Shown here: piece by piece, positions 22,925-33,666 of the stretch | Layout of the letters: every line of letters begins with the position of its first letter | Position numbering within the stretch: position 1 is the stretch's first letter | Sequence record: MZ475893.1 | Reading direction: 5' to 3' (one strand) | DNA length: 64,000 nt | The notes under the pieces: generated by a model | The model's database searches: none | Told to the model about the DNA's origin: nothing | The model's input: only the letters and a program-made list of their open reading frames with translations | Program-made: the position numbers and the translations under genes

Positions 22925-23309
22925 TCAGTTACGTGATCAATTGACCGAAGCTGAATACGCAGAACTTGAGCGCAAGACAGCACGGTCAATCATGGAACAA
23001 GTGTGGGCACTACGCGGCTGGACGGTTAAGCTCGACTGGTGCAACTATATGTGCGACGACGTTGATTGGTTATTCCATGGTAATGAACGTAAAGCACCGG
23101 TTGATCACGCTATGCCGAATTCTGGTGTTGGCACTAGCATTGAGCAGCATCGCCTTAATGTCGTGTTTACTCCTACTGAGGTTAGCGTTACGAACTCACT
23201 GGTAGACAGCCCTGTCACGGGCACTGGTATGTCACTGCGCTGTGCTTACTGCGCGTGGCTTTTAGAAATCGAAAAACAAAAGGCTGCCAATGCGCTGCAA
23301 TCTGACTGA
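22911..23309 (+). CDS. hypothetical protein
   Basis: 132 aa, overlapping neighbours. Confidence 0.55.
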   Translation: MSSVNQLRDQLTEAEYAELERKTARSIMEQVWALRGWTVKLDWCNYMCDDVDWLFHGNERKAPVDHAMPNSGVGTSIEQHRLNVVFTPTEVSVTNSLVDSPVTGTGMSLRCAYCAWLLEIEKQKAANALQSD

Positions 23310-23805
23310 ACTGCCTATCAAACTCGATCAGGCTGAAAACATTATGGGCAGCGTGTTTGCGCTTGCTGCTGGCTCCAAGTCCAAACGCCGTGCTACTGCG
23401 GCAATGCTCATTCACTTCCATGAAGGCTACCCTACTATTATCAGTAGTGGTGTCAATGGCACTGTGCCTGGTGAGAGCAACGTGTGTGAGAACGAAGACC
23501 TCACTCTGACGTTTGCACACGTTACACACGCAGAAGCTAACTGCCTCAATCGCATGGATGAATACAGTCTATGGCCAGAAGAAGAGGACATCCTGTTCTG
23601 CACTGACAGTCCATGTCCTGATTGTTTGCAGCAACTCGAATCTGCTGGTGTGCAGACCATCATTTATGCGCGTGAATACAGACTCACAGAGCATCTGGAT
23701 AAGTCTGCTATTCGCATGTATTGTCTCGATATTGAGAACGTGCGGGCGTCTTTGCTGAAATCTGTAAATCGTATAGACGAAGTGATTGCAACCACACCTA
23801 CTTAA
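23290..23805 (+). CDS. dCMP deaminase-like zinc-dependent deaminase
   Basis: SGVNG, HAEANC, TDSPCPDC, IIYAREY. Confidence 0.88.
   Translation: MRCNLTELPIKLDQAENIMGSVFALAAGSKSKRRATAAMLIHFHEGYPTIISSGVNGTVPGESNVCENEDLTLTFAHVTHAEANCLNRMDEYSLWPEEEDILFCTDSPCPDCLQQLESAGVQTIIYAREYRLTEHLDKSAIRMYCLDIENVRASLLKSVNRIDEVIATTPT
23762..23769 (+). promoter_or_regulatory. CTGTAAAT motif
   Basis: 53 nt before ATG 23823. Confidence 0.45.
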
Positions 23806-24508: not shown

Positions 24509-25006
24509 ATGAGCGACATTAATCAATTACGCCGCAACTGGTTACAGTCTATGGACGTGCCCGAAGAGCTGGTGGACAAAGTATGCGGCACAGACATTGA
24601 ACAGCAAGATCTGTTTGAGCGTCTGAGCGCACAGCAACAACGCAAAGTAACGATCGGCCTTGCGCTGCTCCATCTGCAAGTGCCTGATGAAATTCGTTTC
24701 GATTTGCTCACCAATCATCTGGACCAGACTGAACGTTTGGTCAAAGAGCAATTCGAAGAACTGGCAGCACGTCTCGTCAATCAAGTGACGCAGACGGGTT
24801 CACCAGAGAAGCAATCAATGACAGGCGGTGTTCGTTTAGCAATGCTGATGAACATCCTTGGCTTTGATGATACCACGCTACACGGTATCATGTCGAACCC
24901 CAGCTTGATGCGTCAGGCGGGCCTTGTTGCTATGACTGGCCTTCAAGATATGGGACAGAAAATACAGCAACTTTACGACGGAAATAAAAGCAATGAGCCA
25001 AAATGA
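24509..25006 (+). CDS. hypothetical protein
   Basis: 165 aa, GAGG RBS. Confidence 0.7.
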   Translation: MSDINQLRRNWLQSMDVPEELVDKVCGTDIEQQDLFERLSAQQQRKVTIGLALLHLQVPDEIRFDLLTNHLDQTERLVKEQFEELAARLVNQVTQTGSPEKQSMTGGVRLAMLMNILGFDDTTLHGIMSNPSLMRQAGLVAMTGLQDMGQKIQQLYDGNKSNEPK

Positions 25007-25130
25007 ATTAGACGATTTCGACATTCCTGATCTGGACGAAGCTGAGCAACGCGCAGAAGCTAAGCGTGATGGTGGCGGGGAAGTTGTCGAAGCATCTGAT
25101 GAATGTGAAGGCGGCGCCTGCAAAATCTAA
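24993..25130 (+). CDS. 45-aa acidic peptide ending in NrdA-like redox tail (ECEGGACKI)
   Basis: Translated by hand: MSQNELDDFDIPDLDEAEQRAEAKRDGGGEVVEASDECEGGACKI*; followed by a terminator; below the ORF track length cut-off. Confidence 0.75.
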   Translation: MSQNELDDFDIPDLDEAEQRAEAKRDGGGEVVEASDECEGGACKI

Positions 25131-25133
25131 TTC

Positions 25134-25160
25134 ATGGGGCCTCGTGCCCCATTTCTGTTT
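25134..25160 (+). terminator. intrinsic terminator
   Basis: ATGGGGC-CTCGT-GCCCCAT-TTCTGTTT. Confidence 0.7.
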
Positions 25161-25174
25161 CTCGGAGAGATGCT

Positions 25175-27730: not shown

Positions 27731-28831
27731 ATGACAGGTCCTCTCGATCTCACTAACCCACAGCACTTCGAACTGTACTCGCTGCACAGTGTTGATGCAC
27801 AGTATATCAATCTGTGTGACGCACTCCTAACGCAGGGTACGCACGAATCTGACCCAGAGCGCACTGACGATACGTGGCATACGCTGATCGGTATTGGCTT
27901 CCAGTTGTCTAACACCAACATCGCTTTCCCTGCGCTGCTGTCTAAGCGTGTCAACGTCCGTGCAGCTATCGATGAATCCTGCTGGTTCGCACGCGGTGAA
28001 ACGAACATCGCAACTCTCGGTTCTAAAATCTGGAACGAGTGGGCAGATGAAGAAGGTGAGAACGGTCCTATCTACGGCTTCCAGTACCGTAACTGGCCTG
28101 ACATTAAAGTGTTCAACACTGTCGAAGGCATGATTGAGCAGCACATCCCACCAGCGATGATTGAGCGCATCTCGAAAGAGATTAACCGCATGAAGGCGCA
28201 GGGCTATATCGAAACTGCGTTGCCTGACGGTCGCGTGTTGTACGAAGGCTATATCGATCAGTACGCTGATGCACTGCGTCAAATCATGGCGCGTAGTCGT
28301 AGCCGCCGCATTCGTGTGCAAGCGTTCAACCCAGGTTACGTTGGTATGCAGAGCCTGCCGCCGTGTCATACCGAGTTTGAGTTCAACGTGACCAAAGCCA
28401 CTGCGTATGAGATTGCGCAGATGGAAGCACGCTCAATGCGCCCTGACGCTGACTCACTGCATATCGTGGTGACGATGCGCAGCAATGACGCGCTATTGGG
28501 CAGGCCCTTCAATATCGTGGGCTACAGCGCCATGCACCAGTTGTTTGCGAAGTGGGCTGGTCTGAACGTTGGTTCGTTTACTCTGAACGTGACCAATATG
28601 CACATGTACGATCACCACCGCGAAGCGTATGCACAACAGCGTGAGCAGTGGCTGGAGCTACAGACGCAGATGCAGACGACAGGCAAACCTGTTGTTTACC
28701 CTACCCTCGAAATCACTGACGACATTCTGGGCCTGACGCCAGAAGAGCTGCTGGATAACGTCAACGTCGATTGGTTCGAGCTGGTGGACTACTCTCCTAA
28801 ACCTGCTGTTAAAGGACGCGTAACCAAATGA
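27731..28831 (+). CDS. thyA: thymidylate synthase
   Basis: LLSKRV, IWNEWAD, GPIYGFQYR, SRRI, LPPCH, RSNDALLGRPFN, NMHMYDHH. Confidence 0.93.
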   Translation: MTGPLDLTNPQHFELYSLHSVDAQYINLCDALLTQGTHESDPERTDDTWHTLIGIGFQLSNTNIAFPALLSKRVNVRAAIDESCWFARGETNIATLGSKIWNEWADEEGENGPIYGFQYRNWPDIKVFNTVEGMIEQHIPPAMIERISKEINRMKAQGYIETALPDGRVLYEGYIDQYADALRQIMARSRSRRIRVQAFNPGYVGMQSLPPCHTEFEFNVTKATAYEIAQMEARSMRPDADSLHIVVTMRSNDALLGRPFNIVGYSAMHQLFAKWAGLNVGSFTLNVTNMHMYDHHREAYAQQREQWLELQTQMQTTGKPVVYPTLEITDDILGLTPEELLDNVNVDWFELVDYSPKPAVKGRVTK

Positions 28832-31530: not shown

Positions 31531-33666
31531 ATGATCATCAAGCCGCCTACAATGAAAGAGATTAATAAGCTGCCCAAGCCTTGGTCAGGTATGAGTTTCT
31601 TTGCAGGTTGCGGTGGTTCATCTACCGGTCACAAGATGGCCGGTATTAACATCCTACTGAGCAACGAGTTCGTGGACGCGGCTCGTGAATCGTATGAAGC
31701 GAACCATCCAACAACCAAAGTGTTGCCCCACGATATTCGTCGTCTTGACCCGAAAAAGCTGCTTAGCTATTGCGGCCTGAGCCAAGGCGAACTGGACTTG
31801 CTTGACGGCAGTCCTCCGTGCTTTACCGAAGACACGTTCATTCATACTGACACTGGTATGAAGTTCATCACTGATATGCGCATCGGTGACTTCGCTATGA
31901 CCTCTGTTGGTAAGTATCATCCTGTGTATGACACGATGGTGCGCCCGTATGACGGTCAGATGCACAGAATTGAAACGCTGCTCGGTCAGAACAATGCAAC
32001 ACCTGAGCATCCATTCTTTGTTCGTCGTCAGAATGAAGAAACTGGCGGGTACAGTGAGCCGTTCTGGTGTGACGCTAAAGATGTGCAGGAAGGCGATTTG
32101 TTGGGTACGCCTCGTGTTACGCCTGACATGGGTGAAGCACACACGCATGAGATTATCTCGTCGTTGACTGCGCAGCTTGTGCGTTGGATTGCATTGCCTG
32201 AGTTTTGGTGGCTGATTGGTCACTGGTGCAATCGCGGTGCAATCGATAAGATTCGTGGTGTCGATGTTATTCAGTTCACCTCGATGACAGCGATGGAAAA
32301 CTCGCTGGTGGAACAAGCGTTCGACGTGCTCAAGTTAAGCAGCATCAACAGCGCTTCGTCCGACATGGGCGTTCACCGTAAGACCGTCCGTGTTGTTATG
32401 GACACAGACCTGTTGCTGTTCTTGCGTATGTTTATCGCACAGGGCAAGAAGTCTATGTCCCGCCGTATGCCAGGCATGATCTTCCATCTGGCCAAAGAGC
32501 TGAAACAGCAATTCATTCTCGGCTATCTGGGTCGTGATTACGTCACAGCAATGGGCGTTGGTCATGCGTTAGAGGCTGACTCAAAGCGCTTCCTCGTTGA
32601 GATGAATTACCTGTGCTGCTCTGCGTTCAACAGACCGCTGTTCGATGCAATGTTGTTCACTGACTTGCATTACGGCAGTCCTATGTTACCGCCGAGTCGC
32701 TTCATCACCAAAGAGCACATTGGCTTCCTGTTCTTACAAGAAGAGGTTAATTTCTTCTTTGAGTTCGAGCCGGAAGACCCGCATCTGTGGGTAGAAGTGA
32801 TTGAGAACTTTACGCACCATGAAACGTGCAACGTCTACAACTTCTCAGTCAGTGTTGATGAGACGTATGTTGCTAACGGTATGGTCGTGCATAACTGCAA
32901 AGGGTTCTCGACTGCGGGTGTGAAAGAAGACGGCTGGGGCAAAGAGGTTAAGTACAGCGGCAACAAGTATCAGCAAGTCGATGACCTGTTCGATCAGTAT
33001 TGCCGTATGCTCAAGCACATGCAGCCTAAAACGTTCACTGCGGAAAACGTTAGTGGCCTCGTTAAAGGTGCGTCGAAGGGTTACTTCATTGAAATCATGA
33101 AGACCTTTGATCAGCTAGGCTACTATGTGCGAGCACCGTTGCTTAATGCTGCGTGGCTCGGTGTGCCTCAGTCGCGTGAGCGTATCATCTTTATGGGTGT
33201 GCGCAAAGACGTGGCTAAAGCACTCGGCTATAAGACTGCGTTGACTGCTGTGCCTGATGTAACACCTCAATCAAGCATGGCGTTCCTTGCAGATGCACTG
33301 CCGAACATTCGTCGGTATAAAGGTACGGAGCGTGACATTATCAAGTATCTGCCTGCTGTTAACGGGCCGATGCCTACGATTACCGCTGCTGACGCTATCG
33401 CATACGAAACAGCACGCTTCTCCTCTGCTGGCTTCATTGAAGACGACAAAGGGCACAGACGCAAGCTGACGATTGACGAACTCAAAGTTGTATCAGGCAT
33501 GCCTAGTGATTACGTGCTCACAGGTAAGTTTGAAGAACAATGGGAACGTCTCGGTCGTGTGTGCGTACCTGCAATGACGTGTGCAGCGGCAAGCGCGTTG
33601 ATACGCCATGTGCTTGAGCCGTACGCGAAGCTGCGTAAAAAGAAACCTGGGGATCGTTTTCGTTAA
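31531..33666 (+). CDS. C5-cytosine DNA methyltransferase family enzyme, intein-containing; candidate carboxymethyltransferase
   Basis: FFAGCGG (I), NEF (II), DIRRL (III), GSPP-intein-CKGFS (IV), ENVSGL (VI), QSRERI (VIII), RKLTIDE (IX), LGRVCVP (X, Asn replaced by Arg). Confidence 0.9.
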   Translation: MIIKPPTMKEINKLPKPWSGMSFFAGCGGSSTGHKMAGINILLSNEFVDAARESYEANHPTTKVLPHDIRRLDPKKLLSYCGLSQGELDLLDGSPPCFTEDTFIHTDTGMKFITDMRIGDFAMTSVGKYHPVYDTMVRPYDGQMHRIETLLGQNNATPEHPFFVRRQNEETGGYSEPFWCDAKDVQEGDLLGTPRVTPDMGEAHTHEIISSLTAQLVRWIALPEFWWLIGHWCNRGAIDKIRGVDVIQFTSMTAMENSLVEQAFDVLKLSSINSASSDMGVHRKTVRVVMDTDLLLFLRMFIAQGKKSMSRRMPGMIFHLAKELKQQFILGYLGRDYVTAMGVGHALEADSKRFLVEMNYLCCSAFNRPLFDAMLFTDLHYGSPMLPPSRFITKEHIGFLFLQEEVNFFFEFEPEDPHLWVEVIENFTHHETCNVYNFSVSVDETYVANGMVVHNCKGFSTAGVKEDGWGKEVKYSGNKYQQVDDLFDQYCRMLKHMQPKTFTAENVSGLVKGASKGYFIEIMKTFDQLGYYVRAPLLNAAWLGVPQSRERIIFMGVRKDVAKALGYKTALTAVPDVTPQSSMAFLADALPNIRRYKGTERDIIKYLPAVNGPMPTITAADAIAYETARFSSAGFIEDDKGHRRKLTIDELKVVSGMPSDYVLTGKFEEQWERLGRVCVPAMTCAAASALIRHVLEPYAKLRKKKPGDRFR
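31819..32895 (+). mobile_element. intein (359 aa) in catalytic PC motif, degenerate LAGLIDADG region
   Basis: Starts CFTEDTFI, block B ATPEHPFF, remnant WLIGHWCNRG and FILGYLGRD, ends YNFSV...VANGMVVHN followed by +1 Cys. Confidence 0.92.

What the first reader, a model, noticed from the sequence alone, without database searches (positions are those of the whole stretch)
24993..25130. 45-aa ORF, absent from the ORF track, that copies the ribonucleotide reductase NrdA redox tail
Seen: MSQNELDDFDIPDLDEAEQRAEAKRDGGGEVVEASDECEGGACKI*, followed at once by a terminator; no RNR gene nearby in the window. Known: E. coli NrdA ends ...DDGCESGACKI, and this flexible Cys pair shuttles electrons from thioredoxin/glutaredoxin to the active site. 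Inference: a free-standing tail could re-reduce an RNR in trans, boost host RNR for dNTP supply, or act as a decoy for Trx/Grx. I know of no described stand-alone version of this tail.
Basis: partly seen in the sequence, partly recalled or inferred. Interest (0 to 1): 0.8.

Follow-up and report, generated by a model that had tools for sequence, protein, structure and literature searches.

The report
Stand-alone RNR redox-tail peptide gene
A 45-codon gene in an Erwinia jumbo phage that has no ribonucleotide reductase of its own encodes a free copy of the flexible two-cysteine tail that the bacterial enzyme uses to recharge itself; it belongs to a conserved, undescribed family also found in Neisseria, and its function has not been tested.

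Summary
The window is bases 1-64000 of Erwinia phage pEa_SNUABM_45. ORF 24993-25130 (+) is real, is annotated in GenBank only as a hypothetical protein, and is followed by a terminator-like hairpin.

Its last 8 residues equal the C-terminus of class Ia NrdA in many Gammaproteobacteria. E. coli R1 differs at one residue. The two Cys have the same spacing and the same distance from the end (C754/C759 in E. coli).

The likeness reaches about 21 residues upstream. A profile of the family finds NrdA C-termini as its best hits in all PDB sequences.

The ORF is not a gene relic:
- 72 jumbo-phage records carry it.
- There are 232 small-protein clusters, 98 at 50% identity.
- The module is always at the extreme C-terminus, sometimes fused to unrelated domains.
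- In Neisseriaceae it sits inside the isc operon.

The phage has no recognisable RNR, so any RNR target would be the host enzyme.

Most likely it is a trans-acting tail that plugs into the host relay from NrdA to thioredoxin/glutaredoxin. Whether it boosts or blocks is open. A homologue in phage phiR1-37 is barely transcribed. No paper, Pfam family or name exists for it.

The parts
24993..25130 (+). Tail ORF: 45 codons plus TAA (GenBank pEaSNUABM45_00040, QYW03683.1, 'hypothetical protein')
   Evidence: Protein is 100% identical in 9 close relatives, and the 2-3 nt differences seen in the three relatives compared are all synonymous. PHROG 10239, E=5e-5.
25008..25025 (+). Residues 6-11, an acidic/hydrophobic motif with the spacing of the NrdB C-terminal tail (hydrophobic-x-x-F-x-hydrophobic)
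   Evidence: 86 of 89 gammaproteobacterial NrdB ends fit the spacing. So do 24 of 83 phage-type family members, against 5.5 +/- 2.2 in shuffles. The Neisseriaceae type does not (4 of 71). This is a subset feature and a lead only.
25032..25067 (+). Residues 14-25, the only predicted secondary structure (one helix)
   Evidence: AlphaFold2 on a 39-sequence alignment gave a helix at 14-25, the rest coil, mean pLDDT 64.
25065..25127 (+). Residues 25-45, the stretch homologous to the flexible C-terminal tail of class Ia NrdA; Cys38 is at 25104-25106 and Cys43 at 25119-25121
   Evidence: C38, G41 and C43 are invariant, and E39, G40 and K44 are at least 90% conserved, in 39 diverse members. This stretch is 61 of 66 nt identical to Klebsiella phage Miami although the flanking genes have diverged.
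25134..25162 (+). Terminator-like hairpin (7 bp, 5 G-C) plus T-run
   Evidence: Terminators are annotated at the same place after the homologues in Miami and phiR1-37.
24509..25006 (+). Upstream 165-aa ORF whose last 14 nt overlap the start of the tail ORF (frame +1), so translational coupling is possible; function unknown
   Evidence: It is conserved at 54-57% identity, with the same overlap, in other Erwinia-phage groups. No Pfam, NCBIfam or PADLOC hit. It is unrelated to the N-domains of the fused forms.
23290..23805 (+). Context: dCMP deaminase homologue (annotated 'hypothetical' in this record)
   Evidence: Pfam dCMP_cyt_deam_1, E=1.8e-9; (H7 annotation).
27731..28831 (+). Context: thymidylate synthase homologue (366 aa)

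Best explanation
The ORF encodes a small, mostly disordered acidic protein whose C-terminal 21 residues are a homologue of the flexible redox tail of class Ia ribonucleotide reductase alpha (NrdA).

Shown: the homology, the conservation of the Cys pair and of its position at the very C-terminus, the stand-alone state, and the absence of any phage RNR.

Inferred: after infection the peptide enters the host's electron relay (NADPH, then thioredoxin or glutaredoxin, then the NrdA tail, then the NrdA active-site disulfide). Its dithiol would be reduced by host Trx/Grx, as the natural tail is, and it would exchange with the oxidised active site of host NrdA in trans.

I consider the most likely net effect to be an extra, freely diffusing tail that shortens the re-reduction step. 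That would raise dNTP supply for a 264-kb genome that brings dCMP deaminase and thymidylate synthase but no reductase. In the window's protein and about 29% of phage-type members, the N-terminal motif may help dock the peptide on NrdA at the groove that binds the NrdB tail.
For: - Tail homology: 107 of 120 bacterial loci that end with the motif are NrdA. E. coli R1 ends the same way apart from one residue, with Cys at 754 and 759.
- The family profile's 13 best hits among 177,635 PDB sequences are all NrdA C-termini or the free R1 tail peptide 1qfn_B (E about 0.014-0.13, always end to end).
- It is a real gene under constraint: 72 phage records, 232 clusters, 98 representative clusters in 1.84 billion proteins with the module always C-terminal, an invariant Cys pair, and only synonymous changes among the three close relatives compared.
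- No phage RNR, although RNR beta is reported in more than half of jumbo phages (PMC13282480). The phiR1-37 gene table also lists none.
- Neighbourhood of nucleotide-metabolism genes.
- The predicted tail is disordered, as published for class I tails (PMC9669993).
- Precedent that re-reduction limits turnover and that a second reductant route raises activity up to 3-fold (mouse RNR, PMC4078304).
- A free 25-residue R1 tail peptide exists as a solved structure (1qfn_B). From my own knowledge this is its mixed disulfide with glutaredoxin 1.
Against: - No experiment bears on it.
- Expression is unproven here. The phiR1-37 homologue g117 has only 1-4 total gene reads, against 10^2-10^4 for its neighbours (PMC4848604 Table S2).
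- The Shine-Dalgarno-like sequence is weak.
- The host genus Erwinia has Ser where the phage has Gly in the tail.
- The same module is fused to at least three unrelated domains, one of them a cpYpsA/SLOG domain. In Neisseriaceae it lies in the isc operon beside iscU although NrdA there keeps its own tail. Neither fact is predicted by a pure 'RNR booster'.
- The NrdB-like motif is absent from most members.
- Free C-terminal regions of RNR large subunits can be harmful rather than helpful (Neurospora UN-24, PMC3618301).
Confidence: 0.35

Rival explanations
1. Decoy or inhibitor. The free tail competes with the native NrdA tail for thioredoxin/glutaredoxin or for the active-site channel. With the NrdB-like motif it would also compete for the NrdB-binding groove. 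The result would be to slow host RNR, or to divert or trap the redoxins.
For: - Same homology evidence as the best explanation.
- Precedents: a free C-terminal region of Neurospora UN-24 forms a non-reducible complex with yeast Rnr1p and is toxic (PMC3618301).
- Yeast Sml1 is cited as inhibiting tail-mediated regeneration (title of Zhang et al. 2007 in the reference lists; the paper itself is not held).
- The NrdB-like spacing is enriched in phage-type members. From my own knowledge, NrdB C-terminal peptides are classical competitive RNR inhibitors.
Against: - A phage without RNR and with a 264-kb genome should depend on host dNTP synthesis, so blocking it looks self-defeating.
- The NrdB-like motif is N-terminal and lacks the free carboxyl end it has in NrdB.
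- Neisseriaceae keep the gene as a stable chromosomal operon member, which is odd for a toxin-like inhibitor.
Confidence: 0.25
2. A portable redox tail for another partner. The module would be a general thioredoxin/glutaredoxin-coupled dithiol arm that serves a phage protein (in cis when fused, in trans when free) and has nothing to do with host RNR.
For: - The module is fused to a confidently folding domain of about 100 aa (pLDDT about 90) in SA002, L010 and P0121-P0129, to a different unknown domain of about 180 aa in P0130, P0131 and P0139, and to a cpYpsA/SLOG domain in P0179.
- In the window the start overlaps the end of a conserved 165-aa gene.
Against: - The partner domains are unrelated to each other and to the 165-aa gene.
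- None resembles a known redox enzyme: no Pfam match and no significant PDB fold match (best E=0.02).
- Synteny is not conserved in distant phages.
- The exact conservation of the NrdA tail down to the last residue argues for the same partners that the NrdA tail has.
Confidence: 0.15
3. An iron-sulfur or metal-related peptide. The acidic peptide with two C-terminal Cys would act in Fe-S cluster assembly or transfer, for example with IscS, IscU or a glutaredoxin. The phages would have borrowed it.
For: In 6 of 7 Neisseria-type loci the gene lies about 70 nt upstream of iscU on the same strand, within iscR-iscS-(lipoprotein-like gene)-ORF-iscU. The family is widespread in Neisseria, Eikenella and Wielerella.
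Against: - The tail is that of NrdA, not of any Fe-S protein found by the searches. The PDB profile search returned only NrdA above noise.
- The phage copies sit among nucleotide-metabolism genes, not Fe-S genes.
- Two Cys alone cannot hold a cluster.
Confidence: 0.1
4. A relic or silent ORF: a left-over 3' end of a lost phage nrdA with no present function.
For: - The tail must have come from an nrdA gene.
- Split and fragmented RNR genes are known in phages (PMC3653736).
- The phiR1-37 homologue is almost untranscribed.
Against: - It is conserved as an intact ORF with its own start across phages whose flanking genes have diverged beyond BLASTP recognition.
- The Cys pair is invariant.
- It has a family-specific N-terminal half that NrdA lacks, and it forms new fusions.
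- There is no other nrdA fragment in the genome.
- DNA identity to any sampled bacterial nrdA 3' end is at most 44 of 66 nt, so it is not a recent capture.
Confidence: 0.07

Closest known systems
C-terminal redox tail of class Ia ribonucleotide reductase alpha (NrdA/R1; E. coli Cys754/Cys759)
   Same: - Same last 8 residues as many NrdA proteins, and one difference from E. coli.
- Same C-x4-C-x2-end geometry.
- An acidic run before the first Cys.
- Predicted disorder.
- Similarity over about 21 residues, including the R-D-G that ends the NrdA barrel.
   Different: It is not attached to any reductase and has its own N-terminal half. It is encoded by a phage without RNR, and as an extra copy in Neisseriaceae.
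Free R1 tail peptide used in structural work (PDB 1qfn chain B, 25 residues)
   Same: It is a free peptide of the same tail, and the family profile hits it. From my own knowledge it forms a mixed disulfide with glutaredoxin 1, which shows that a free tail can be a redoxin substrate.
   Different: 1qfn_B is a laboratory fragment. The phage ORF is a natural gene with an added N-terminal region.
Small disordered RNR regulators of yeasts (Sml1, Spd1)
   Same: They are small, unstructured proteins that act on the large subunit. Sml1 is cited as blocking tail-mediated regeneration (reference title seen).
   Different: No sequence relation was found: Pfam gave no family for the ORF even at E<=1. These are eukaryotic proteins and are not tail copies.
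UN-24 C-terminal incompatibility domain of Neurospora RNR large subunit
   Same: A C-terminal region of an RNR large subunit that, expressed alone, acts in trans on the large subunit (complex with Rnr1p; PMC3618301).
   Different: It is 135 aa, fungal and an experimental construct, with a toxic outcome. No homology was tested or expected.
Split nrdA genes of phages (e.g. Aeromonas phage Aeh1 nrdA-a/nrdA-b)
   Same: A piece of NrdA encoded as a separate phage ORF (PMC3653736).
   Different: In those cases both halves are present and rebuild the enzyme. Here the rest of nrdA and all of nrdB are absent from the genome.
C-terminal tail of NrdB (binds NrdA; peptide inhibitors)
   Same: Residues 6-11 have the hydrophobic-x-x-F-x-hydrophobic spacing found in 86 of 89 NrdB ends.
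   Different: The motif is at the N-terminus, not at a free carboxyl end. It is present in only 24 of 83 phage-type and 4 of 71 Neisseriaceae-type members.

Membership tests
Class Ia NrdA C-terminal redox tail | Two Cys spaced C-x4-C, with the second Cys two residues before the C-terminus | tested here: met
   112 of 120 listed family members keep it.
Class Ia NrdA C-terminal redox tail | Sequence homology to NrdA tails beyond the Cys pair | tested here: met
   The profile of 11 stand-alone members finds NrdA C-termini as its top 13 PDB hits, E 0.014-0.13. Visible likeness over about 21 residues to the Proteus/Providencia/Photorhabdus type. The E-values are marginal because the stretch is short.
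Class Ia NrdA C-terminal redox tail | Is the C-terminal extension of an RNR catalytic barrel | tested here: not met
   The protein is 45 aa with no Pfam domain, and the genome holds no RNR. It is therefore a homologue of the tail, not an NrdA.
Class Ia NrdA C-terminal redox tail | Flexible or disordered | tested here: met
   By prediction only: the tail is coil with pLDDT 56-57 in the free form and below 50 in the fused form.
Class Ia NrdA C-terminal redox tail | Reduced by thioredoxin/glutaredoxin and reduces the active-site disulfide | not testable with these tools
   This is a biochemical property. Only the precedent of the free R1 peptide 1qfn_B is available.
Split phage nrdA | The remaining part of nrdA, and nrdB, are encoded in the same genome | tested here: not met
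   tblastn of Erwinia NrdA and NrdB against all six genome pieces gave nothing better than E about 1. Pfam on the 30 largest ORFs found no RNR domain.
NrdB C-terminal tail mimic | Hydrophobic-x-x-F-x-hydrophobic motif in an acidic context | tested here: met
   Residues 6-11 of the window protein fit. PSSM shuffle test p=0.024 (a 7-residue PSSM).
NrdB C-terminal tail mimic | Motif at the free C-terminal end and shared by the whole family | tested here: not met
   The motif is N-terminal. It occurs in 24 of 83 phage-type and 4 of 71 Neisseriaceae-type members.
Thioredoxin/glutaredoxin-fold redoxins | CxxC active site in a thioredoxin fold | tested here: not met
   No Pfam hit and no fold. No canonical redoxin motif in any phage ORF of 60-200 aa.
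PHROG 10239 (phage proteins of unknown function) | Profile match | tested here: met
   E=5.2e-5 over residues 5-45, ending at the profile's end. Weaker matches to PHROGs 14561, 38753 and 24014.
Sml1/Spd1-type RNR inhibitors | Sequence family membership | tested here: not met
   No Pfam family at E<=1. Functional analogy cannot be tested here.
Known anti-phage defence or RNA families | Match to PADLOC or Rfam models | tested here: not met

The most novel reading that the evidence does not exclude
A portable 'enzyme tail in trans'. Jumbo phages that have given up their own ribonucleotide reductase would carry only its electron-shuttling tail as a 45-residue gene, and use it to drive the host enzyme through the host's thioredoxin/glutaredoxin. 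The same module would be re-used as a plug-in arm on other phage domains, and by Neisseriaceae it would be tied to Fe-S assembly. This would be the first natural case of a catalytic-cycle element of RNR supplied as a separate diffusible protein.
Probability: 0.3. Interest if true: 0.85.

Novelty: new variant of a known kind. Interest (0 to 1): 0.7.

Why it matters
RNR controls dNTP supply and is a classic drug target. Its C-terminal tail is known only as part of the enzyme.

A conserved, free-standing tail gene would show one of two things. Either re-reduction of RNR can be served or tuned by a separate small protein, or viruses copy this tail to reach the enzyme or its redoxins.

It would also give a function to a widespread 'hypothetical' micro-protein. 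That protein occurs in 72 phage records, in 232 clusters, and in a core-operon gene of Neisseria including N. meningitidis. It would also explain how some very large phages manage without their own reductase.

Finally, it is a reminder that ORFs under 50 codons can carry the most conserved sequence of a locus.

Tried and rejected
- Single-sequence searches of the 45 aa against PDB, Pfam, NCBIfam and PADLOC found nothing relevant. Only the profile and the genome scan revealed NrdA.
- DNA search against E. coli genomes gave no match. There is no recent capture from any sampled bacterial nrdA: at most 44 of 66 nt identical.
- A weak tblastn hit of the NrdA tail at genome position 206116-206256 is noise, with no Cys pair.
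- A two-gene module shared with Neisseria is rejected. The Neisseria upstream gene is unrelated to the phage neighbours.
- Fusion of the tail with the upstream 165-aa gene, or a relation of that gene to the N-domain of the fused forms, is rejected.
- I considered a frameshift joining the two ORFs. No slippery site is evident and I did not pursue it.
- The N-domain of the fused form has no Pfam family, no PDB sequence hit and no significant fold match.
- A phage-encoded redoxin partner: none found.
- An RNA element to explain the nucleotide conservation: no Rfam match.
- Co-occurrence with phage RNR could not be read from the phage searches because the lists are capped.
- Literature searches for the motif, the Neisseria locus tags and phage factors acting on RNR found nothing.
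- Bug: read NrdB tails with a trailing newline. One search was therefore in effect a 7-residue PSSM, and the first line was wrong. This is corrected.

Full report
**Identity of the window and the ORF**

The window is bases 1-64000 of Erwinia phage pEa_SNUABM_45 (MZ475893.1, 263,891 bp, host Erwinia amylovora), at 100% identity. GenBank annotates it as a hypothetical protein. Its start overlaps the last 14 nt of a 165-aa ORF. A hairpin at 25134-25152 plus a T-run follows the stop.

**Is the tail that of NrdA?**

Single-sequence searches found nothing useful. I therefore aligned the ORF with its first relatives. I then scanned one genome per bacterial species for a degenerate DNA pattern made only from the family's invariant tail columns plus a stop.
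- 1 more (L016) is an NrdA 3' end cut off by the locus edge.
- 7 are small stand-alone ORFs (6 in Neisseria records, 1 in a 778-bp contig labelled Terrabacter).
- 5 are chance matches.

Supporting results:
- One long ORF has the ATP-cone, all-alpha and barrel domains of RNR, with NrdB downstream.
- PDB sequences show that E. coli R1 (761 aa) ends with the same arrangement. This places the Cys at 754 and 759, and one residue differs from the phage ORF.
- In reverse, a profile of 11 stand-alone members finds NrdA C-termini (E. coli, N. gonorrhoeae) and the free R1 peptide 1qfn_B as the 13 best hits among all PDB sequences.
- The likeness extends about 21 residues upstream and is closest to the Proteus/Providencia/Photorhabdus type.
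- The pattern occurs once in the window and never in 100 shuffles.

**Is it a gene?**

- tblastn finds it in 72 jumbo-phage records: Erwinia, Klebsiella, Dickeya, Yersinia phiR1-37, Serratia PCH45, Salmonella, Stenotrophomonas and Raoultella.
- An alignment-based search finds 232 small-protein clusters, all unnamed.
- An exhaustive profile search of 1.84 billion representatives finds 98 clusters. The module is at the extreme C-terminus in every one, and no hit has NrdA length.
- 112 of the 120 listed members end C-x4-C-x2, and 74 share the window's last 8 residues.
- In 39 diverse members C38, G41 and C43 are invariant.
- The nine closest relatives are 100% identical in protein. In the three compared at the DNA level, the 2-3 nt differences are all synonymous.
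- Against Klebsiella phage Miami the flanking genes are no longer recognisable by BLASTP, yet the last 66 nt are 61/66 identical.
- No Rfam family explains this.

**No phage RNR**

- tblastn with Erwinia NrdA and NrdB against the six genome pieces (kept separate) gives nothing significant.
- Pfam on the 30 largest ORFs finds polymerase A, ligase, topoisomerase, RecA-like, helicase, methylase and virion proteins, but no RNR domain.
- No canonical redoxin motif occurs in the phage ORFs.
- phiR1-37's published gene table also lists no phage RNR.
- phiKZ-type Pseudomonas phages do have NrdA, and RNR beta is reported in over half of jumbo phages (PMC13282480).
- The neighbourhood holds a dCMP deaminase and a thymidylate synthase.

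**Unexpected relatives**

(a) Neisseriaceae. A 42-aa version lies about 70 nt upstream of iscU, in the order iscR, iscS, a lipoprotein-like gene (present in 2 of 3 loci that include iscS), the ORF, iscU. It is bracketed by DNA-uptake-sequence hairpins. N. gonorrhoeae NrdA (7mdi_A) keeps its own tail, so the ORF is an extra copy.

(b) Fused forms. The module ends proteins of 162-296 aa with at least three unrelated N-terminal domains.
- One domain folds confidently but matches no known fold.
- One is a cpYpsA/SLOG domain.

(c) A subset of phage-type members, including the window's protein, begins with a motif that has the spacing of the NrdB C-terminal tail. The count is 24 of 83 against 5.5 +/- 2.2 in shuffles. 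The Neisseria type lacks it. The sequences are related to each other, so the shuffle test overstates independence.

**Structure**

The free peptide is predicted to have one helix (residues 14-25) and an unstructured Cys tail.

**Expression**

There are no data for this phage. The phiR1-37 homologue g117 has its own annotated RBS and terminator but only 1-4 total gene reads (PMC4848604).

**Interpretation**

The homology, stand-alone state, conservation and lack of a phage RNR are shown. Everything about activity is inferred. I favour a trans-acting tail in the host NrdA-Trx/Grx relay (0.35 as a booster, 0.25 as a decoy or inhibitor). Weaker alternatives:
- a portable arm for other partners (0.15);
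- an Fe-S-related role (0.1);
- a silent relic (0.07).

Published background:
- the function of class I tails (PMC9669993);
- rate-limiting re-reduction of the active site (PMC4078304);
- trans action of a free RNR C-terminal domain (PMC3618301);
- split phage RNR genes (PMC3653736).

- While planning, I recalled from memory two short motifs before any tool had shown them: the acidic tip of bacterial SSB and the last residues of E. coli NrdA. The NrdA tail reported here is the one printed.
- In running comments I also wrote degenerate patterns summarising conserved columns of the family. They were not saved. Only the invariant-column pattern was used as a search pattern.
The phage genome pieces were searched apart.

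Noticed in passing
window 31531-33666 (+): This 711-aa protein combines a C-5 cytosine DNA methylase domain with Hint/intein-splicing domains, so it looks like an intein-bearing methyltransferase. The record calls it hypothetical.
   Followed up: no
L082:5063-5191 (+) and L017, L027, L084, L096: Neisseria species carry a 42-aa stand-alone NrdA-tail ORF inside the isc operon, about 70 nt upstream of iscU and bracketed by DNA-uptake-sequence hairpins. It is named only 'hypothetical protein' (e.g. in N. meningitidis H44/76).
   Followed up: partly
L143:3611-4102 (Salmonella phage SA002) and L010:5608-6102: These are fused forms: a conserved N-terminal domain of about 100 aa with a confident fold but no known relative, followed by a linker and the tail module. 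Other fusions in metagenomes carry a cpYpsA/SLOG domain or an unknown domain of about 180 aa.
   Followed up: partly
window 25065-25130 versus L002:4001-4066 (Klebsiella phage Miami): The two are 61 of 66 nt identical, with 16 of 21 codons identical, although the neighbouring genes share almost no detectable similarity. This could be recent exchange of the small gene or constraint on synonymous sites.
   Followed up: partly
window 27731-28831 (+): The thymidylate synthase homologue is 366 aa, about 100 aa longer than the 264-aa models, and it matches them in two or three stretches. That suggests insertions.
   Followed up: no
window 24509-25006 and L002:3417-3911: The 165-aa and 164-aa genes upstream of the tail ORF in this phage and in Miami share only an identical hexapeptide at equivalent positions. 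They are probably very diverged orthologues of unknown function.
   Followed up: partly
P0072 and P0101 (metagenome contigs under 900 bp): These 89-aa predicted proteins join the first 46 or so residues of IscU to the tail module. They may be gene-call or assembly artefacts at the iscU boundary, or real variants.
   Followed up: no
L135:102-2603 (genome 200102-202603, outside the window): This is an 833-aa protein with RecA-domain matches in two stretches. It is much longer than RecA, so it may carry an insertion.
   Followed up: no
L013:3874-6063 (IMG/VR contig): This viral contig has a full-length NrdA whose tail is a close variant of the same motif. Phage-encoded NrdA proteins with this tail therefore exist and could have been the source of the module.
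   Followed up: no
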